Shown one piece after another: positions 3,801-38,865 of a DNA stretch of 64,000 nt. Source of the stretch: Botryllus schlosseri. Its lineage: Eukaryota. Numbering within the stretch: position 1 is the stretch's first letter; the number at the start of each line of letters is the position of its first letter. The notes beneath the pieces were generated by a model. It saw only the letters and a program-made list of their open reading frames with translations, did no database searches and was not told the origin of the DNA. The position numbers and the translations under genes were made by a program. The stretch is from contig CM119385.1 of NCBI GenBank assembly GCA_051294905.1, positions 20,894,001-20,958,000 of the forward strand, given 5' to 3'.

Positions 3801-6800
3801 ACCAGTATTCGCAGATCTTGTACAGTTTGAAAATTTTGAATTTACTTGAAAATGCAGAAAAAAAATTTTTTCCAATTTTTCTGTCAACCACATGAAATTG
3901 TTGAGCTGTCTTCAAAAATGATGCAAAACAAATTTGACTCAATTCCAACTCGCAGAAGCGGAGTTATCTCCGAGTTTTTCGATGATATTTCTTCGATTAT
4001 CTACCGATCAAGGATAATCCCAGAATTATCAAAGAAAAACTCAAATAACCCAGCCTCAACGGGTTGGAATTGAGTCAAATTTGTTTTTCATCGTTTTTGA
4101 CGGTGTTGGATAGGCCTGGTGTTGAATAAAACAGTTTTCGCCCCTACCATATTTTAGAAATTTTGTCACAAATAATGCAGAAACTAAAACAAATACCTGC
4201 TTTGCTACCCGAACAGAAAGATCCAATCATGCGAGATATAAATTTCAAGGAAACACTTTCACTTTTTCTCATCTTTGCGACCAAAGCATCAATGGCCTTT
4301 CCAGTATTGAGAGCCAGCATTTGAAAAAATACGATGTGATGGAATATCTCGCTGAAAATTAAAAATCAGTGATACGGGATCACGGGATACCGTTAGGGAA
4401 TAAAATTGGTTAATAACTCAGTTTGAGAAGTTGTGCAGCAATTTGTACTACGCCGCCTGATCCGTGGACGACTGAACGTGTGTCAGAGTTGTGTTTAGGG
4501 TTATAAACAAACATGCTCGACTATTGTTTTTCATTGTTTCCTAGGCTCAAATGTCGGGCAATTGTATTATAGCCATCAATACGTAGGCTACATGTATTAG
4601 ACTTAAACATATTGTGTTGCTGTAAGGCCACCTGTTATGCTGATGGATATGTTGCCATGATTCGGATTTCTTCGCCATTTGACAGCTGGTTTATAAAACT
4701 TTGTTGTTTTTGTACACCAGGTTGTGCTTTTAGTATATGTATGCAATAGGGCTGTTCAAAAATACCTTTTTCCTCCAAATGTTACTGGCTATTTGATAAA
4801 ATTGTTAGGTTGCTGAAAAACACTACACACCGAATTTGGCTAAATTCAAACCTATAGAAGCGAAACCGATAGAGTTAAACTTTTCAAAAATACCTTTTTC
4901 CTCCAAATGTTACTGGCTATTTGATAAAATTGTTAGGTTGCTGAAAAACACTACACACCGAATTTGGCTAAATTCAAACCTATAGAAGCGAAACCGATAG
5001 AGTTAAACTTTTTTGGATTTCTTCAAAAAAATTTTTTTTTCAAATTTTACTGGTCAAGTCATGAAATTACTAAGCTGTCTGAAAAAAAAACGATATATAG
5101 CAAATATGGCTCAATCGCAACAGGCAGAAGCGAAGTTATTGAAGTAGAAAGTTATGGATTTGAAGTTATAGTATTTACGGTGAGTGGGTATATAATTAAA
5201 GAATTTCCCGAAATCCAAAATTTTGTACTCCAATATTTTCGTTTCTACAGGTTAGAATAGAGACAAACCTGTTATGCATCATTTTTCAGACAAATGATTA
5301 ATTTCATGGCGTTTCCAGAAAAAAATTTGAAAAAAAACAACATTTTTTTATTGAATTTGAAATTTCCTAACTCAATAGCTTCGCTTCTTAAGGTCGAAAT
5401 TGAGTCAAATTTCGTGCTTAGTGTTTTTTATAGCCAACCTAACAATTTTAACAAATAGCCAGTAAAATGAGAAAAAAAGTTATTTGAACAGCCCTAGTTT
5501 GCAAATTTGGCTTGAGCCATTTTATTCAGCTAGTTATAACAGACTTGAGTTGATCTGTTTTATGTGTCAGGTAAAGCTTAAAATAATCTTGTAGCTTACC
5601 TGAATTTCCCCGAAGTATTATTAGCAACTGCATTCGGTAATGAATTCAAGGAGTTCACGAGACTTTCCATCATTCTATTTTCACTGATACTGTTCTCGCT
5701 GCACATCGTCGATTTAGCGACCAATAGAGAAGTAAATCGGCCGTCTCTGAAATACCGTGCAAGGCACATCAAGCAGAGCTCCTGTCGAGATCCAACACTG
5801 AAAAGTATCAAATGTAATGGGTTATCAGCTAGGGCAAGTTTTTGTCGCCGTCAAATTCCTGGATAGTTGCACTTATTTTTCACAAAAATTGCGGTAAAAA
5901 GTTGCATTTAATTTTTGCATAGGTCGCACTAAAAAGTTGCATTTATGGAAAAGTTCCTTCAAATTATTACGTTTTGAGATACTCGAATTGGTACGTATCC
6001 AAAGCACTCTAGCAAAACTCAATGTTGGCGAATTCAACAAAATCAATAGCCTGACAAAATTAATCCAGCGAAAATATAATTTTCGGCGGTCCAGCCTGAA
6101 TGTACGTCTAAACAGAAAAGACATCAAATTTAAACGGCAGTGAAATAAACAATCGGTGCATTTACATATAGTGCCACATGTTTCCAGTGAAAAGTTGCAT
6201 AAAAATCAAACAAACTTACAAAAAGCTGCATGAAAAATCGAAGAAGAGTTGCAAAAAGTAGCATGAAAAAATGAAGAAAAGTTGCAATGTAAGACTCCAT
6301 ACTACATAACTTCCGAGTAATTAGGTTGCAAAAACTTGCCCTTCAGTTGTCACGACTCATTAGGCATCAGAATTTTGGTGAAAAGCCACACAATGGATAT
6401 TAAATCAGCTGTATCTGTTAAATTGTTTACGAGCACTTTGCTATAAATGGGGGAAAATGCAAGTAATCATCCCTTTTGGAGTTGAGACGTATTATAGAGT
6501 TGGGCGACTACAAAATTTTCAGCTTTTGCAAATTAGATCAAAACTATACTAGAATTAGTACTACAATATTTTTTTTAAATTACATTAGAATTGCTGAATT
6601 CGCAGAATAAATACAAAAAAAATGAAGTTTTAGTTCATATCAATTCTGAGTCCACTCTCATTTAAGCATCATAGCGTGCGTTGTTTCGCACCATACAGTT
6701 CTCCCGTAATATTTTCAAGAAAATCAGAACTCAGATTATAATTAACATTAGAGCACAGTAAGATTTAATAAACTAGATTGGAATTAGATTACTGGCATTT

Positions 6801-22734: not shown

Positions 22735-23410
22735 TAGGAGCGTAACGTCCGCACCCCACCCCACCCCCAACTGAGTGAATTAACATAAATTAAAGAGTAT
22801 ATTTTTGAAAACTTATGCAACGCTTTTTAATATTACCAAATATCTTGAATATTCGGTACCCTTACCCCATGGAAAATGCAGGATTTACAGAAATAATGGG
22901 CATTTCAGCGTCGGCCATTACCGCGCCACGACGCACCAAGACATATGAAGTTTTAGGCCATGTAACATGCGACTCTGAGAAGTGTGCCAGCCAGAACGAT
23001 CGGCAGCGGGAAAACCTTAGCCGAAAAGGAATGAAAAGAATTGCTGATAAACCGAACCGAGATATGTAAGGTAGCCGCAGATGATCGGTATCCGCATTAT
23101 AGTTAGACGGAAGATCTCATAAGGTGGCGCCCTATGCTCGTGTCAAATTCACTCAAAGAATGGCGAGACTCGGTGCCATTCGTTTCAAGATTTGTCATTT
23201 CAAGCACGACCGCAACGCGTGATCAATGTGTGTTCGTTTTGGCTCTGTTATGGGCTATGGCATGATATTTAGAAATAATGTGGATATTGTGAAATCACCA
23301 GAAGCATGAAGGATCCGTGATGCAGCCCATGCCCGAGGCAACGCACGTAAAACTTATAAGATGTGCCATCATTTCAAGGCCCCCGAGATACCGTCATTCG
23401 TTAAATCCCA
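22735..23410. mobile_element. Dispersed repeat, probably hAT-related; internal part shared with 37790-37940 (inverted)
   Basis: GGCCATTACCGCGCCACGAC...AACATGCGACTC...GAAAACCTT.GCCGAAAAGG occurs in both places. Confidence 0.55.
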
Positions 23411-25753
23411 TGTGGCAGACACGGATCAACCAAGAATAGACAGCAGACATTGTTTCGAAAAGTAAGGAAGACCCCACTATATGAACGAATGATCAACAAG
23501 TTGAGTGCAGTCGTTAAATAAGGTCGTTTGCGAGAGAGCAGCGTTGTATGGTAATGATGAGTCGTCACTGATGGACTGGGTCTTTCCAAGGCGCAACACA
23601 AATACGATGGCATTCTATCAAATTATTTCTATGGAATTTCGTCATAATTTTGTTTTGTTGCACCAAATCACTTCTATCGGTTCTATCATTGACTGTCCGG
23701 CATCCCGTTCATATTTAAATACACCCAGGGGTAATCGCCAGCAACTAGTATGGATAATTAAAAATAACAGTATATCATTTTGATCTAGCTAGAATGGTCT
23801 TCTGGATTCTCTACTAGTTGCTGACATCACCCCAGGCAAGTGTCAGCCGAAAATATTCGGGTATATTTCAATATGAACATATTATTCAATTGTTTGCTGA
23901 TTTCCCGAGAGAGCATAATATATGCTACCTGGGGTTGACGAGCATTTTAGTGATTTTGTTCAATACATTTTCTAGAATTGGGGATAGGTTCGGAAAACTA
24001 GTTAAAAGGAGATCTAATTCCGCATCTTTGAATCATGACTCCAGTGAACAAGGAGTCTTTCATTGCATCCGTAATTGTGAATATGAATTTATTACTCAAT
24101 TGTGTACTGGAGTACAATAGTCTGTTCTATTTGTGAAGAGCAGAGCGTACTCACTACTCATATTGACTAGATTGGTTCAATCTACGCTGGTCTACTGAAA
24201 ATGCAAACGAAAAAACTACATCGGGATACTAAAGAGGGGCGTGAAATTTATCTTCCGTCACAAAAATCACTTGTAAAAGTTGTTAATAGTCCTTTCGAAT
24301 ATCTACGAAAAACATGGCAATGATCATCGATCAGTTGTATTAAACTGGTTGAATTAACGTTGCTAGAATGATGATCGTGCGGCCACATAGCTGCCGTATC
24401 TAGATGTTCACCGTAAAGTATGCATGGCGCGTGTGCGATAAACGGACATATGTACTTTACGGAGCAAATGCGTTCAACAACAGCAATGTCTGAGCAAACG
24501 ATTCTTCGTAACCGTCTCTCAAATTCTTGTAGCTATAAATGTAGCGGAACGCTCGTTCTCTCGTATTAGAACTTATTTTCTTTCTTTACGTTCACATTAT
24601 ATAACGTCTGACACGAGAGAAATCGTTTCCTTCGAGTGTTTTAGTGCACCTGATGTAGGAGTGCTAATTCCGTTGCATGCTCGTGATTATGTTCCAACAT
24701 TGCAGTAGGCTATATTTCAGACAAGGACTGGAACGTATGATCAGCGAGCATTCAGCACTGCTGTATTATATATAATCATATATTTACTGTACTATCATGT
24801 TGATATTTCTCTTTGTTTGAACGTGAGCGATTTATGAATCATATGTAATCGCAGTTTCAACTAACTTTCGCTAAGCATTGTAAACTGCTTGTCACGAGTT
24901 TTTAAGGACACGGATCCGTTTGAGCCAAGTCTTGTGCAATATAGATTACGTAAGGCGCCGGTCAGCTGATGGTTAAACCAGCTGTTGCAGCAGTGCGGCA
25001 TTCGTCTGTATCACGTAGCACGCACGAAGCTAGCGCGTGCTCCTTTGAATAAAAACAACTCGCTCACTTCTTTTCCCAAGCTTGAGGACTTGTCTCTTTC
25101 ATTCTCCAATAAACCTAGCTCGGGCAGACAGCTATCGAAGCTGATCTGTTTACCTCAATGGCCTCTCTTTGTGAAGTTGAGGCCCGCGAGGTAAGCAGTG
25201 TGCCTTTAAGTAAGGCTGCCCGCTACGCGCAGAAAACAGTGTAAGCAGTGTTAATGTATAGCACACCAGTCCAGAGATCATTCTTCTGCAGTAAGGAGGA
25301 CAGATGTAGCCGGCATTCTCCCACATGTTGCTGTACACGCCATTAAATTACAGCGATAGTCTCATTCACAAAGTATCATCCGGTGATAAAATGTCTGCAG
25401 CTGATAAACCGTAATCATGAATTCTTCCGAATTGTTTGTTTAATAATGAAATAAGAATTAGTACTTGATATTGGTATGGAATTTAAATCCTATTTATTTA
25501 CAATCCGATGTTTTGGTCTCGTTGATAACGTGATGGTAGTAAAATGGCGTTTATTTAAACTAGAGGGTGCGCTAGACCAGACAAATGATAAAAGGTGCAG
25601 TTATTTCGACATAGGTACACAGTGGCAGTTACATAACAAAATTTTAGGAGACTCTTGGAGGCGCAGAACTTCGTTTTAAAATATATAAATATGTTCATAT
25701 TGCGATAAACGTGAGTATTTTCGACTGACACTCGTCAGGGTAATAATCAGCAG

Positions 25754-34900: not shown

Positions 34901-36731
34901 CTGACTCAGGAAGTCGTTGTGGGCAAACGTATCGATTCGCTGGTTCGCACAAGCAGTCGGCACAAAGAAACGCATTTCTTTATGCACCACCAAGATGATG
35001 TGACCGAGATCCAGCATACATATATTCCAATGGCATTACCGACATCCAATATCAGACAAGGAACACACACTATAGCTACGTACGTATATAACTATTTATA
35101 CTTACACAGTCGTAAACAGTTGAGCTGTGAGCGACATTCAAAGGTAGCCGTGACAAGGCCTAGGCATTTCTAGAGAACAGCAACTATCGGTATGGAGACA
35201 TAGTAAATATTATTGTCTCAGGAAGATCATCGACCGATGTAACATACTGATCATGTTATAAAATCACTATCTTCGAAACGAATAGAAATTCGCTAAAATG
35301 CATATCAGCGTCAAGGTCACCAAGCTGTCTGTTCGCGGGCCGTAATGATATATATGTTGAAGTAGTTGGACGATTGATATGATGAAGCTATGGATAACTA
35401 GCCTCTGTACAATAAGTTCTATTTTGTGAAACATGATGAACCCCGAGGATAGCATTATGCCACCTCTGCCGCACGACTATTCTTGTTTATCACCGCATTG
35501 CGACACCCGAGAGAACGTAAAGAGAAAAGCCTCAGTGAATCAGCATCAGCATTTGCAGCGGCTCAACCAAGATAACACAAGAGAATAAGACCGGCACAGC
35601 TACCGGTAGAAGCAAGAAACACACTCGCTTTCATTTTGGATTAAAATAGCAATCCTCTCCCGGAATTGAATAGTGCATATTTTCTCGCCTGTCATACATA
35701 TACGATTGCGTAATAATGCTTGGGAAATGATTCTTTGTTATTACTTTGAAATCGAATACATAAACGATAAAGTGTCGGGCCTTGTTATCTTCTGTAACGT
35801 GACCCAGCGCTTTGTAAAGCACGGAGACATGCTCCCATGGTCTCTTAAATAGCCTAAGCACAACTGCATCATCCGCGCCATAATTGGTATAAGTTTTAAG
35901 ATGTTCTATATGAGTACTTTGCCCTCTTGCGAAATCGTATGCTTTGTTTTCACTGTACATCTCTATATCCGAATCACAGTTGTTTAGGATACTGTTTTAG
36001 CTGTCGCGCTCGGTTCAAGCTGATAAGTGAGACGGGTACATGCTTTTGTGTGCTATATCTGTGACCACACGAGAGGTCAGTTGTGCATGATCTTTGGTGA
36101 CATTCTGCAACGCTTTTGATCAAGCGATTCCTTTGATGAAATGCTCTTTCAGCAATGGTTCGCTACAGCAATTCATTCGCCAATCGGCAATGCCTGTGCA
36201 ACAGGCTGTGAGCAATGAGCGTCGGTATTCCCGTCAGCCATTAAGTGATTGCAATACCACATGGTGTTCCGCCTTGCGACAGGAAATTGTGCAATTTTGT
36301 TCGATTAATGCCACGCTTCACACAATTAGAAACCTTTTCCAAAATACGGGCTTCTTCCGCCGAATTGATATCTTCCATCGTACTGCCGTAGTTGCAAACT
36401 GCAAATGTGATAATCGAAATGCGGGTCCAACGATATATTCAGCTCATGTCTCTTTAAATACAAAATGTGAACAGCTGTCGCGTTGATATCTATGTATTCT
36501 TGTGTGGTCGTGCCTGCAACGCAAAAGGCTGTGCTACCTGCGACAAATCAAAGCAACATAATCTATGAAAACACGTGCCGGACTGCCGGTGTGATAGTCG
36601 GTGCGTAGGTCGCACGTTCCAGCGCTTGCAGCCAGCATGTCCCACGGAAAATTAGAATAACGAATGTTTCTTCTACTCCATCATCGCAGTCTATTGACAC
36701 ACTGCGTGATTATGATCAAGTTACTGCTTGT

Positions 36732-38252
36732 AATTCGGCTATTGGACAGCATCTCTTATTCCATCCTGAATGTGCTAATCATTACAATGACAGTCAATTT
36801 TCTATAGTTGCTCGTGGCCAGGGCCGTAACAGCACTTCGCCAGGCCCCCCCAAAAAACTTTGGTCGTGGGCCCACCATAGGGTTATAGACCGAACTTCTG
36901 GGGGGCTTCGCCCCTCAGACCCCCCTCCGGCGATACCCTGTTTACCGCTATTTATGATATGCGTTGGGAGTTTGTTTAGTGAATTGCCCTAAACGCGCGA
37001 AGCGCGGGAAATTTCTAGAATTCATGACTGAATCGGTCAATATGATCGGGAATTGCATATATCTTGTTATCAATTTTTATCTTCTCTCTGCTCACGTAAT
37101 CAGATTTGCCGGTAGAGCTGAGTGAGGTGTGTTTGAAAAGGTAGGACCACTCAATAATAATTAAACATCATCGGGCGTATGCCCGTTGGTAGGAACGAAA
37201 CAGCACCTCGTCAGGCCCCCAAAAACGTGGGTCTTGGGCTCCCATAGGGTGATGAAACGACCCCTCCATCACGTTGTTCGCGTTTGTCACGAAATCATCT
37301 GTACTGTATTGTGAGCCAGCGCGAAGCGCGAAAATTTTCAATAATTTGTGATAAAATCGGTCAATCAGATCAGCGATTGCATATATATTATGCTATCAAT
37401 TTATTGTCCTCTCTACTCACGTAATTAGATTTACCGGTAGAGCTGAGTGAAGTGTCTTGAAAACGGGAGGGCCCGTAAATAATAATTGAATATCTTCGGG
37501 CGGGCGGACCCGTTGATATGACTTAGTTACATGATGTTATTTCGTGACTTTCAGTCTGCTATATCAAAAAATATAGAATCGCCCAAACGTAGGCTTCTAA
37601 ACAAAGAGTCGCACACGATTTCAAATTGGTATCTCTTCACTGGCATAAAATTTTTCCCAGCGGGATGGTATTTGTCTTGTGAGGTTCAGATTGCAAAGAC
37701 AGGAACATTCGGCGCCAGTCATTTAGGCGCCAATGGACAATTAAACCTATATGTATTTTGTATATATAACAAAGTCTTTGGTCAGCATAAGGGCATAGAC
37801 CTTTTCGGCCAAGGTTTTCTCGCTGTCGATCGTTCTGGCACACTTCCTGGAGTCGCATGTTATATGGCCTAAAACTTGATTGTATGTCTTGGTGGGTCGT
37901 GGCGCGGTAATGGCCCAATGCCCAATAATAAAGATACATGGCTACTTGAATTCGCGCGCAGCGCGAAAAATGTTTTAAAAAGTTGCATAAATTTTCAAAA
38001 AATACTCTATGATTTATGCTAATTCACGAAATAATTTTGGGCCCCCTTCGAGCTCGCCCCCCCCCCCAATTGGGGGGTTTGGGGTTCGGCAGTTACGGTG
38101 CTGCTCGTGGCCGCTCTCTTTTTCATTTGAAGGTCCTGGAGTCGACGATCATAAAGCCGCGAAAGCCGATTCCCTGTCGCCAGAAGGAACGCCTCTACAC
38201 CCTTGGAGAATTTCATCGATGTTCTGTGTTGTTGTCTCCAGTTAGTTATTGA
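36732..38252 (+). mobile_element. Penelope-like element remnant (GIY-YIG endonuclease C-terminus), split by a hAT insertion
   Basis: Removing 36819-38111 joins in frame NSAIGQHLLFHPECANHYNDSQFSIVARG and RSLFHLKVLESTIIKPRKPIPCRQKERLYTL, a typical PLE C-terminus. Confidence 0.85.
36819..38103. mobile_element. Non-autonomous hAT-type DNA transposon (1285 bp)
   Basis: TIRs CAGGGCCGTAAC / GTTACGGTGCTG, perfect 8-bp TSD CTCGTGGC (36811-36818, 38104-38111); internal ~365-bp tandem duplication. Confidence 0.9.
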
Positions 38253-38401
38253 CCGAATATGTAGGCCTACCCGTTAACGTTTATTTTGTATCGCTACTAC
38301 CGTATCTTGCCTGTCCCCTAGTTTTTTGTTATTGTTATTATTACGTCATACATACAAAATAGTTCCTACATTTCTAATTTGATTCACCCTATTACTGACG
38401 T

Positions 38402-38439
38402 TCGCTACTGATGAGAGTCAGTCGAAAAGCTTTTAACGA
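38402..38439 (+). ncRNA. Minimal type I hammerhead ribozyme motif
   Basis: TCGCTA-CTGATGA-G(AGTCAGT)C-GAAA-AGCTT-T-TAACGA. Intact CUGAUGA and GAAA core, G10.1-C11.1 pair, palindromic AAGCTT stem III, UUU triplet, stem I 5/6 pairs. Confidence 0.75.
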
Positions 38440-38865
38440 TAACAATATGAAGTTATTGTTTCGCGTTATTCTAAAGTTCTGTACCCCTAATAGTGTACAC
38501 TGTGCAGTACATTGTGCAATGTTCGTACATATAATGCTGCGACGCCAGAAACTGTTGTAAACTATCTGTAACCTCTGGTCATCACACAGCTCTTGAGAGA
38601 GTGAGAGTTTATTTGGGAATCACAATTAAGCATCGTTATGGATTCGTTTCAAACGTTTATCGATTTTCCGGATAAGTTGGCCTGCTTTACTACACTACAA
38701 CTTACTCCTTATTTTACGCCCTCATCTCCGGACACTCCGTTTTAACTCCATACCAAATAAGTTAACAAAATCATATTCTTGAAATAATTTTCGCTTTCTT
38801 GAAGCTAAGCGAGACATTCACTAATAGCGATTTGGACTATTATCAAAACTTGTACTGTTATGTCA

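What the first reader, a model, noticed from the sequence alone, without database searches (positions are those of the whole stretch)
38402..38439. Apparently intact minimal hammerhead ribozyme behind a Penelope ORF end
Seen: every catalytic-core nucleotide is present (CUGAUGA 38408-14, G10.1-C11.1, GAAA 38424-27). Stem III is the self-complementary AAGCUU, and stem I pairs 5/6 across the predicted cleavage site after 38433. The motif lies 150 nt after the stop of a reconstructed GIY-YIG C-terminus. Established: Penelope-like element terminal repeats carry minimal type I hammerheads with palindromic stem III that act as dimers. Inference: this copy may still self-cleave, though a UUU triplet is weaker than GUC.
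Basis: partly seen in the sequence, partly recalled or inferred. Interest (0 to 1): 0.8.

Follow-up and report, generated by a model that had tools for sequence, protein, structure and literature searches.

The report
Dead Penelope retroelement tail with hammerhead
The motif is a real small self-cutting "hammerhead" RNA signature, but it sits in a broken, truncated copy of a Penelope-type jumping gene, which is a known pairing; the less ordinary point is that this family builds the ribozyme's second helix by pairing with a box just upstream instead of with a hairpin.

Summary
Window 38394-38439 carries every hammerhead core nucleotide, G10.1-C11.1, the AAGCUU palindrome and a 5/6 stem I.

It is the 3' end of a Penelope-like element (PLE). 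Intact relatives are 2778-bp tandem units with an 850-aa RT + GIY-YIG ORF. The genome holds 1235 exact matches to the motif pattern, against 5 for the reversed control.

The window copy is a relic:
- 5'-truncated, keeping only ORF residues 711-850;
- carrying a stop, a frameshift and a lost stop codon;
- split by a 1285-bp hAT-like insertion;
- weakened in stem I by a G-to-A change (38436) and a 6-nt deletion (-2.1 vs -7.5 kcal/mol).

It has no intact partner copy in the 64 kb. Self-cleavage of this copy is unlikely and is untested.

Helix II is not a hairpin. The strand 38417-38422 pairs with an upstream box at 38394-38399. This pseudoknot covaries at 5 of 6 pairs among genomic families. It recurs with different sequences in seven PLE relatives from other samples.

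RNA-seq showed no read ends piling up at the family's cleavage site.

The scan had already noted this pseudoknotted hammerhead on other DNA of this genome (s1-231978, s1-229058, s1-286518). That lead was re-tested here and extended beyond the genome.

The parts
36511..36818 (+). PLE ORF remnant covering the GIY-YIG region (residues ~711-816 of the 850-aa protein), with an in-frame stop and a frameshift. The 5' truncation point of the insertion is at about 36511.
   Evidence: blastn to L031:4232-4543 at 87.5%; tblastn to P0001 711-816 at 74.5%, with a stop and a second frame
36819..38103 (.). Later insertion of a 1285-bp hAT-like non-autonomous DNA transposon. Terminal inverted repeats are CAGGGCCGTAAC and CAGCACCGTAAC. 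The 8-bp target duplication CTCGTGGC lies at 36811-36818 and 38104-38111. Not part of the PLE.
   Evidence: sequence at both junctions and the overlap of the PLE alignment; internal ~325-bp direct repeat
38104..38219 (+). End of the PLE ORF (residues 813-850). The ancestral stop codon position 38217-38219 now reads CGA.
   Evidence: BLASTP 35/38 identical to P0001 813-850; L031 stop TAA at 4648-4650
38220..38393 (+). Inter-ORF (pLTR) sequence upstream of the ribozyme. In intact copies the transcript 5' ends map to the equivalent of its first ~30 nt.
   Evidence: alignment A1; template-switch-oligo-tagged read ends at L031 4664 and 4678
38394..38399 (+). Upstream pseudoknot box ACUGAC, which supplies the 10.x side of helix II.
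   Evidence: 6/6 complementary to 38417-38422; covaries in 5 of 6 pairs across 69 genomic copies and in seven PLEs from other samples
38401..38407 (+). Stem I 5' strand UUCGCUA (38400 G is the 1-nt linker to the box).
38408..38414 (+). Core C3-A9, CUGAUGA.
38415..38423 (+). G10.1 (38415), 1-nt linker A (38416), pseudoknot strand GUCAGU (38417-38422), C11.1 (38423).
38424..38433 (+). G12 A13 A14, palindromic stem III AAGCUU (38427-38432), and H17 = U (38433). The predicted scissile bond is 38433/38434.
   Evidence: palindromes of different sequence in other PLEs
38434..38439 (+). Stem I 3' strand UAACGA. The A at 38436 replaces the family's G, and 6 nt are deleted just after 38439.
   Evidence: alignment A1; duplex energies
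38440..38491 (+). Start of the next unit's ORF (ATG 38447-38449, inside the hairpin ACAAUA/UAUUGU), running to the 3' end of the insertion (the long, 'tail'-bearing form).
   Evidence: homology to L031 ends at 4920 = window 38491; read junctions at L031 4897-4899 and 4925-4928

Best explanation
Window 36511-38491 is a dead, 5'-truncated insertion of a Penelope-like retrotransposon. A hAT-like transposon later split it.

Why the ribozyme is there. In this family reverse transcription starts about 40-70 nt downstream of the hammerhead, so even short insertions carry the motif. That accounts for more than 1200 motifs in the genome.

Architecture. The ribozyme is a type-I minimal hammerhead:
- a 7-bp open stem I;
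- the canonical core;
- a stem III that is only the palindrome AAGCUU, so two copies must pair to form one 6-bp helix III (the dimer mode known for PLE hammerheads);
- a helix II made of the single G10.1-C11.1 pair extended by a 6-bp pseudoknot. The six nucleotides before C11.1 pair with a box that lies 1-3 nt upstream of stem I.

Inferred geometry. One nucleotide (A38416) crosses the groove of this 6-bp helix. The short linker between the box and stem I ties the far ends of helices I and II together, taking the place of the usual loop-loop contact.

Inferred function in active tandem copies. Transcripts start in the upstream unit's pLTR. Cleavage would remove the ~190-nt leader and leave a 5'-OH RNA that begins 19 nt before the ORF's ATG.

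This copy. The box, core, pseudoknot strand and palindrome are intact. Stem I is crippled, the element is dead, and no intact partner lies nearby. It is most likely a non-functional fossil.

What is shown and what is inferred. Shown: identity, anatomy, covariation, the decay of this copy, and transcript 5' ends. Inferred: the 3D arrangement, the dimer requirement (from the literature and from the palindromes), and the biological role of cleavage.
For: Element identity:
- Tandem units of 2778 bp with intact 850-aa ORFs.
- Pfam RVT_1 at residues 367-548, plus a weak GIY-YIG match at 728-756.
- 614 homologues carrying the same three Pfam families (RVT_1, DUF8422, HTH_animal).
- The window fragments align to the unit at 86-87% and to protein residues 711-850.

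The motif is not chance: 1235 genomic matches against 5 for the control, and 0 in shuffles.

Structure, counted on 69 distinct genomic copies:
- The pseudoknot is paired in 88% of cells, with double changes at 5 of 6 pairs.
- Pair types include A-U/G-C/U-A, U-A/C-G, G-C/A-U, A-U/G-C and C-G/U-A.
- Stem I is paired in 75-91% of cells.
- Slid controls are paired in 23-39%.
- The covariation score is 0.424 against 0.214 in shuffles (0 of 500 reach it).

Box/loop sequences differ by family: ACUGAC/GUCAGU, ACUAAC/GUUAGU, GCUGAC/GUCAGC, GCCGAC/GUUGGC, ACUGGC/GCCAGU, UCUGGC/GCCAGA and ACUGGU/ACCAGU.

The same layout is found in seven PLEs from other samples, at 40-60% protein identity:
- The boxes include UCUGAC, GGCUAG, GGCAAU, CGUGC, CUCCAU and UCCUAU, each complementary to its own loop.
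- The stem III palindromes include AAAAUUUU, AACGUU, AAACGUUU, AAAGCUUU and AGGCCU.
- Two of the seven have the U3-A8 core variant reported in PMC4209133.

Hairpin alternative: the 10.2-11.2 pair forms in only 70% of copies, against 91% for the pseudoknot pair that uses the same nucleotide.

Decay of the window copy.

Transcript 5' ends lie at L031 4664 and 4678, and insertion ends at 4897-4899 and 4925-4928. The two insertion ends match the two adjacent RT start sites and the 'tail' described for a PLE in PMC11167929.
Against: - No self-cleavage was measured.
- In three RNA-seq runs, no pile-up of read starts or ends was reported at the family's predicted site (L031 4856/4857), at a depth of roughly 30-70 reads. 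Most of those reads come from solitary truncated copies inside other transcripts.
- Metazoan PLE minimal hammerheads cleave poorly in vitro even as dimers (PMC4209133). The Anolis PLE hammerhead needed the element's protein and was dispensable for insertion in vitro (PMC11167929).
- The pseudoknot is supported by covariation only. Its role as helix II, rather than as an alternative fold, is a geometric inference.
- With H17 = U and U1.1 the palindrome extends to AAAAGCUUUU. In cofold predictions the dimer zips through A13-A14 and the cleavage site, which would be an inactive pairing.
- Transcription of the window locus itself was not tested.
Confidence: 0.85

Rival explanations
1. The window copy is still a working ribozyme. 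When transcribed, it dimerises through AAGCUU with another PLE transcript and cuts after 38433.
For: The core, G10.1-C11.1, pseudoknot (6/6) and palindrome are all intact. All families sampled in this genome share AAGCUU, although the search pattern required it, so heterodimers with abundant PLE-derived RNAs are conceivable. The 5' strand of its stem I is unchanged, so it could still pair with an intact partner's 3' strand.
Against: Stem I is reduced to 2+3 bp around a C.A mismatch, and its outer pairs are lost (-2.1 vs -7.5 kcal/mol). No intact partner lies on either strand within 64 kb; the only other relic, 25714-25738 on the minus strand, has lost its palindrome. Even intact PLE min-hammerheads are weak in vitro (PMC4209133). 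No read ends pile up at the family's site. Transcription of this locus is not shown (one search is inconclusive).
Confidence: 0.1
2. The conserved hammerhead-like fold is kept mainly as a structured recognition element for the PLE ribonucleoprotein, not for cleavage. It sits just upstream of the reverse-transcription start sites and the start codon. Cleavage would be incidental or absent in vivo.
For: The motif lies 41-72 nt upstream of the two insertion end points. PMC11167929 found hammerhead mutants still insert in vitro and saw no RNA-seq ends at the site. PMC4209133 allows for functions other than cleavage. PMC8557442 notes that PLE clades without canonical hammerheads proliferate well. 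Here too, no read-end pile-up was seen.
Against: Every catalytic nucleotide is conserved across families and across 40-60% diverged PLEs. C3-G8 changes only to the compensating U3-A8. That points to selection on the catalytic fold itself. The palindromic stem III is kept while its sequence changes, which fits a dimeric active form.
Confidence: 0.15
3. Helix II is just the 2-bp hairpin (G-C, A-U) with a 5-nt loop. The upstream complementarity forms a competing hairpin that sequesters the core (an off-state), not part of the active ribozyme.
For: ViennaRNA folds the window monomer with the box paired to 38417-38422 as an ordinary hairpin enclosing the stem I 5' strand and the core. The 10.2-11.2 pair can form in 70% of copies.
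Against: A hammerhead with a 1-2 bp helix II and nothing else would be very poor (from my own knowledge of minizyme work, not checked here). In several families 10.2-11.2 cannot pair at all, for example GUGUUGGCUC and GAGCCAGAC, while the pseudoknot pair is kept. Box length (5-7 bp), a 1-nt linker after G10.1, a 0-1 nt linker before C11.1 and a 1-3 nt linker to stem I are constant across very different sequences. This fits a stacked helix compatible with stem I.
Confidence: 0.1
4. The motif is a chance match to the short hammerhead consensus.
For: The core consensus is short, and Rfam gives no hit.
Against: 0 matches in 100 shuffles; 1235 genomic matches against 5 for the control; fixed position in a PLE unit; covariation.
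Confidence: 0.01

Closest known systems
Minimal type-I hammerheads of metazoan Penelope-like elements (Cervera & de la Pena 2014, PMC4209133; Lunse, Weinberg & Breaker 2017, cited in PMC6765202)
   Same: Located in the pLTR of an RT + GIY-YIG element. Type-I topology with the canonical core and G10.1-C11.1. Stem III is reduced to a palindrome that implies a dimer. Thousands of mostly solitary copies derive from truncated insertions. The U3-A8 core variant also occurs.
   Different: The published min-HHR consensus has a long hairpin helix II (7-8 bp) with an extra unpaired nucleotide, and a short helix I (4-5 bp). Here helix II has no hairpin: a single closing pair is extended by a 6-bp pseudoknot with a box 5' of a 7-bp stem I. 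PMC4209133 does not mention a pseudoknot. The Lunse paper could not be read here.
Poseidon PAc hammerhead of Anolis carolinensis (PMC11167929)
   Same: The hammerhead overlaps or abuts the ORF start. There are two adjacent reverse-transcription start sites downstream, giving an optional 'tail'. No RNA-seq ends are seen at the cut site.
   Different: PAc is described with a canonical stem II and loop II, and its ORF starts inside stem II. In the window's family the ATG lies 19 nt after the cut. One relative, L108, does start its ORF inside the pseudoknot strand.
Hammerheads whose stem I/stem II tertiary contact is a Watson-Crick helix (Perreault et al. 2011, as cited in PMC10085705 and PMC7936874), and type-SGC permuted hammerheads (PMC10085705)
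   Same: A base-paired link holds helices I and II side by side. In type SGC one side of stem I is joined to one side of stem II by a ~3-nt linker, as the box is joined to stem I here.
   Different: Those ribozymes keep a full hairpin or two-strand stem II and add the pseudoknot on top of it. Here the pseudoknot is helix II. The order of the core blocks here is the ordinary type-I order (CUGANGA, GAAA, cut site), so it is not one of the SGC/CSG/GCS permutations.
HDV-like ribozymes at the 5' ends of R2, RTE and L1Tc retrotransposons (reviewed in PMC6765202)
   Same: A self-cleaving RNA placed just upstream of the retroelement ORF that could trim a longer co-transcript. Cleavage would leave an uncapped RNA starting close to the start codon.
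   Different: A different ribozyme class and a different retroelement class. 5' processing is shown for R2 but only inferred here.

Membership tests
Hammerhead ribozyme (type I) | Core CUGANGA ... GAAA with U16.1-H17 at the cut site, in type-I order | tested here: met
   38408-38414, 38424-38427, and U38432-U38433; the pattern is unique in the window and absent from shuffles
Hammerhead ribozyme (type I) | G10.1-C11.1 pair closing helix II | tested here: met
   G38415-C38423; G-C in 60 of 69 genomic copies
Hammerhead ribozyme (type I) | Stem I supported by covariation | tested here: met
   All 7 pairs show changes on both sides across the families. In the window copy itself it pairs only 5/6, with an internal C.A mismatch.
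Hammerhead ribozyme (type I) | Helix II as a hairpin of 3 bp or more next to the core | tested here: not met
   At most 2 bp are possible. It is replaced by a 6-bp pseudoknot with 38394-38399, supported by covariation.
Hammerhead ribozyme (type I) | Match to a curated Rfam hammerhead model | tested here: not met
   No hit for the window at gathering score or at E<=10. An intact copy scores 22.6 bits against 56.3 for RF03152.
Hammerhead ribozyme (type I) | Site-specific self-cleavage | tested here: inconclusive
   No read-end pile-up at the family's site in three RNA-seq runs. This is not a biochemical test, and most of the reads come from solitary copies.
PLE minimal hammerhead acting as a dimer | Stem III reduced to a short self-complementary sequence | tested here: met
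   AAGCUU at 38427-38432. Relatives carry AAAAUUUU, AACGUU, AAACGUUU, AAAGCUUU and AGGCCU, so palindromy is kept while the sequence changes.
PLE minimal hammerhead acting as a dimer | A second copy available (tandem units) | tested here: not met
   True for intact arrays, which repeat at 2778-bp spacing. The window has no second intact motif.
Penelope-like element | Single ORF with RT followed by a C-terminal GIY-YIG endonuclease | tested here: met
   RVT_1 at residues 367-548 (E = 7e-10). GIY-YIG at 728-756 is weak (16.9 bits, below the cut-off). Homologues carry PF01541 or the same three families. The window keeps residues 711-850.
Penelope-like element | Partial tandem or inverted arrays forming pLTRs, 5'-truncated copies, and an optional 3' 'tail' | tested here: met
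   Direct and inverted 2778-bp arrays. The window copy is truncated at unit position 4232. Two classes of 3' ends lie about 28 nt apart.
Non-LTR retrozyme (small non-autonomous tandem repeats with hammerheads) | Short non-coding tandem unit bounded by hammerheads | tested here: not met
   The unit is 2778 bp and coding. The window copy is a truncated autonomous element with an ORF remnant.
Non-circularly permuted hammerheads (types SGC, CSG, GCS; PMC10085705) | Core blocks in an order other than a circular permutation of C-G-S | tested here: not met
   The order here is CUGAUGA, then GAAA, then the cut site. Only the 10.x strand of helix II is displaced.

The most novel reading that the evidence does not exclude
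The pseudoknot-for-helix-II hammerhead may be a so-far undescribed topological variant that is the norm for a whole clade of C-terminal-endonuclease Penelope-like elements, in this animal and in several unidentified marine eukaryotes. Hairpin-based descriptors and Rfam models cannot see it. PLE hammerheads would then be under-counted. Some 'HHR_core' motifs reported as not fitting any stem/loop descriptor (PMC8557442) might be explained the same way.
Probability: 0.4. Interest if true: 0.65.

Novelty: new variant of a known kind. Interest (0 to 1): 0.45.

Why it matters
For this locus it matters little: it is one more dead Penelope tail among more than a thousand in the genome.

At family level the result is more useful. 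It gives a covariation-backed structure for a hammerhead that lacks a helix II hairpin, and the structure makes the distal ends of helices I and II covalently close.

It shows why standard descriptors and Rfam miss these motifs.

It places the cut 19 nt before the ORF start, downstream of mapped transcript 5' ends. The idea that cleavage trims a capped leader from tandem PLE transcripts therefore becomes directly testable.

Tried and rejected
- **Rfam.** Scans at gathering score and at E<=10 gave no hammerhead hit for the window. An intact copy gave only a weak RF03152 hit.
- **Inverted repeats.** None were found around the motif by the repeat finder.
- **Reads for in-vivo cleavage.** No pile-up of ends was seen at the site. 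This is a negative result with caveats: depth was low and most reads come from solitary copies in host transcripts.
- **Transcription of the window copy.** It could not be settled.
- **Lunse et al. 2017 (PMC5785218).** It is not held, so I cannot exclude that the pseudoknot was drawn there.
- **Supplements of PMC8557442.** They are not held, so the Naiad 'HHR_core' idea is untested.
- **Per-locus shuffle test of the box-loop complementarity in the seven outside PLEs.** Each test is weak on its own (p = 0.01-0.28, with composition preserved in a 14-nt window). The case rests on all seven agreeing in position and on the in-genome covariation.
- **Conservation of the hammerhead block.** It is only modestly more conserved than the upstream pLTR among eight copies (93% vs 86%) and no more than the downstream ORF start (94%).
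- **Rejected readings.** Retrozyme, permuted hammerhead and chance match were all rejected (see the membership tests).

Full report
**1. The observation**

The sequence at 38394-38439 reads as follows:
- box ACUGAC, then linker G;
- stem I 5' strand UUCGCUA;
- core CUGAUGA;
- G, A, GUCAGU, C;
- GAA, then AAGCUU, then U;
- predicted cut;
- stem I 3' strand UAACGA.

The motif is unique in the window and was absent from 100 dinucleotide-preserving shuffles. In the 495-Mb genome the pattern CTGANGA-N(7-11)-GAAAAGCTT occurs 1235 times, against 5 for the reversed control.

Rfam finds nothing in the window, either at gathering score or at E<=10. An intact relative gets only a sub-threshold hit to RF03152.

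**2. What it belongs to**

A search of the genome with 38250-38600 gave more than 1200 candidate places. Many lie in direct or inverted arrays with a 2778-bp period.

One array (L031) holds two intact 850-aa ORFs 2778 bp apart. They carry Pfam RVT_1 and a weak C-terminal GIY-YIG match. The protein has 614 homologues with the same families: RVT_1, DUF8422 and HTH_animal. This is a canonical Penelope-like element (PLE) with the endonuclease at the C-terminus.

In intact units the layout is as follows:
- the ORF stops at L031 4650;
- the hammerhead core starts at 4831;
- the predicted cut is at 4856/4857;
- the next ORF's ATG is at 4876.

**3. The window copy is a relic**

Only unit positions 4232-4920 are present. 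They correspond to window 36511-36818 plus 38104-38491, at 86-87% identity.

- The protein remnant covers residues 711-850, with an in-frame stop and a frameshift.
- Its last 38 residues are 92% identical to the intact protein.
- The ancestral stop codon position now reads CGA, so the frame runs on to 38252.
- The fragment is split by a 1285-bp element (36819-38103). That element has hAT-like terminal inverted repeats and an 8-bp target duplication, CTCGTGGC.

Against other copies, the ribozyme region differs by G-to-A at 38436 (stem I position 1.3) and by a 6-nt deletion just after stem I. The stem I duplex energy falls from -7.5 to -2.1 kcal/mol.

The only other hammerhead-like relic in the window is at 25714-25738 on the minus strand. 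It has lost its palindrome and its stem I.

**4. Helix II is a pseudoknot**

I tested that claim.

Between A9 and G12 there are only 9 nt, which allow at most a 2-bp hairpin. The six nucleotides before C11.1 are complementary to a box 1-3 nt upstream of stem I. The two sides change together between families of the genome:
- ACUGAC/GUCAGU
- ACUAAC/GUUAGU
- GCUGAC/GUCAGC
- GCCGAC/GUUGGC
- ACUGGC/GCCAGU
- UCUGGC/GCCAGA
- ACUGGU/ACCAGU

The sample of 69 distinct copies was chosen only by core and palindrome. On it:
- the pseudoknot is paired in 88% of cells, with changes on both sides at 5 of 6 pairs;
- stem I is paired in 75-91% of cells;
- slid controls are paired in 23-39%;
- no shuffle out of 500 reaches the observed covariation score.

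The competing hairpin pair 10.2-11.2 forms in 70% of copies. The pseudoknot pair that uses the same nucleotide forms in 91%.

**5. The same layout outside this genome**

I examined seven contigs that encode homologues of the ORF at 40-60% identity. They come from marine metagenomes and one public run, and the organisms are not known. All seven show box, short linker, stem I, core, closing pair, 1 nt, box complement, GAAA, palindrome. The sequences are unrelated to one another.

| Locus | Box / loop complement | Stem III palindrome | Core note |
|---|---|---|---|
| L103 | UCUGAC/GUCAGA | AAGCUU | U3-A8 variant |
| L104 | UCUGAC/GUCAGA | AAAAUUUU | |
| L105 | GGCUAG/CUAGCC | AACGUU | |
| L106 | GGCAAU/AUUGCC | AAACGUUU | |
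| L107 | CGUGC/GCACG | AAAGCUUU | |
| L108 | CUCCAU/AUGGAG | AGGCCU | U3-A8 variant |
| L109 | UCCUAU/AUAGGA | AAGCUU | C where A13 is expected |

The U3-A8 core variant was described for PLE hammerheads in PMC4209133. The single-locus shuffle tests are individually weak. What carries weight is that all seven agree in position.

**6. How it most likely works**

Shown: the pairings above.

Inferred:
- The pseudoknot strand stacks directly on C11.1, because the linker there is 0-1 nt.
- The single nucleotide after G10.1 crosses the groove of the 6-bp helix. This is the same geometry as loop 1 of classical pseudoknots, where one nucleotide can span 6-7 bp of deep groove. That rule is my recollection of the pseudoknot rules and was not checked here.
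- The 1-3 nt linker from the box to stem I ties the far ends of helices I and II together, replacing the loop-loop contact of ordinary hammerheads.
- Stem III cannot form in one molecule. The palindrome implies a shared 6-bp helix between two copies, as proposed and shown for PLE hammerheads (PMC4209133, PMC6765202).

**7. RNA evidence**

Three raw RNA-seq runs and one contig set were laid on L031:3900-5700.

- Coverage is concentrated on 4570-4936. Most reads run on into unrelated sequence (91% in X24), so they come from dispersed truncated copies inside other transcripts.
- Reads carrying the template-switch oligo mark RNA 5' ends at 4664 and 4678. These lie just after the ORF stop and about 180 nt upstream of the ribozyme. 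This fits the known promoter activity of pLTRs (PMC6765202).
- Junctions to flanking sequence cluster at 4897-4899 and 4925-4928. These match the two adjacent reverse-transcription start sites and the optional 'tail' reported for a PLE in PMC11167929. The window copy ends at the long form.
- No pile-up of read starts or ends was reported at 4856/4857.

Cleavage in vivo is therefore not shown. PMC11167929 likewise detected no reads beginning or ending at the Anolis PAc hammerhead's predicted cut site.

**8. Comparison with what is known, and novelty**

The PLE-hammerhead link, the palindromic stem III, the dimer mode and the mass of solitary truncated copies are all published. The window copy adds nothing to them, and it is probably inactive.

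The pseudoknotted helix II is not mentioned in the PLE hammerhead papers I could read. The published metazoan consensus has a long hairpin helix II. PMC8557442 reports hammerhead cores with a 7-17 nt spacer that fit no stem/loop descriptor. Whether those are the same variant is untested.

Lunse et al. 2017 could not be read, so prior description cannot be excluded.

I therefore rate the finding as a new variant of a known kind, of moderate interest. The scan had already flagged the variant elsewhere in this genome.

Noticed in passing
window 36819-38103: A 1285-bp non-autonomous DNA transposon with hAT-like terminal inverted repeats (CAGGGCCGTAAC / CAGCACCGTAAC) and an 8-bp target duplication, CTCGTGGC. 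It contains an internal ~325-bp direct repeat (36995-37177 vs 37319-37502, ~79-81% identical). Part of it (about 37800-37915, query positions 981-1096 of the insertion) also matches 22913-23029 on the opposite strand.
   Followed up: partly
window 25714-25738, minus strand: A second, degraded hammerhead relic of another PLE family (CTGACGA GTGTCAGTC GAAAATACT). Its upstream box GCTGAT is still partly complementary, but the stem III palindrome and stem I are lost.
   Followed up: partly
L031:4664 and 4678: RNA-seq reads carrying the SMART template-switch oligo start here, in two independent libraries. This marks transcript 5' ends 14-28 nt after the PLE stop codon and ~180 nt upstream of the ribozyme.
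   Followed up: no
L031:4897-4899 and 4925-4928: There are two classes of junction between PLE sequence and unrelated flanks, in both reads and genomic copies (L008 has the short form, the window copy the long form). They are ~28 nt apart, like the two reverse-transcription start sites and the 'tail' reported for the Anolis PLE.
   Followed up: partly
L031:4872-4889 (window 38442-38459): The ORF start codon sits in the loop-side of a small conserved hairpin (ACAAUA ... UAUUGU) directly after the ribozyme. Its function is unknown.
   Followed up: no
L103:1-100 and L108:464-490: PLE relatives from other samples carry the U3-A8 variant of the hammerhead core (TTGATAA, TTGAAAA). In L108 the ORF's ATG lies inside the pseudoknot strand.
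   Followed up: partly
L031:4856: In two single-cell RNA runs, 15-25% of reads have A instead of U at the cleavage-site nucleotide H17. This is still an allowed H, so expressed copies differ at this position.
   Followed up: no
window 38425-38434: With H17 = U and U1.1 the stem III palindrome extends to AAAAGCUUUU. Predicted dimers zip through A13-A14 and the cut site, which is a possible inactive pairing peculiar to this family.
   Followed up: no
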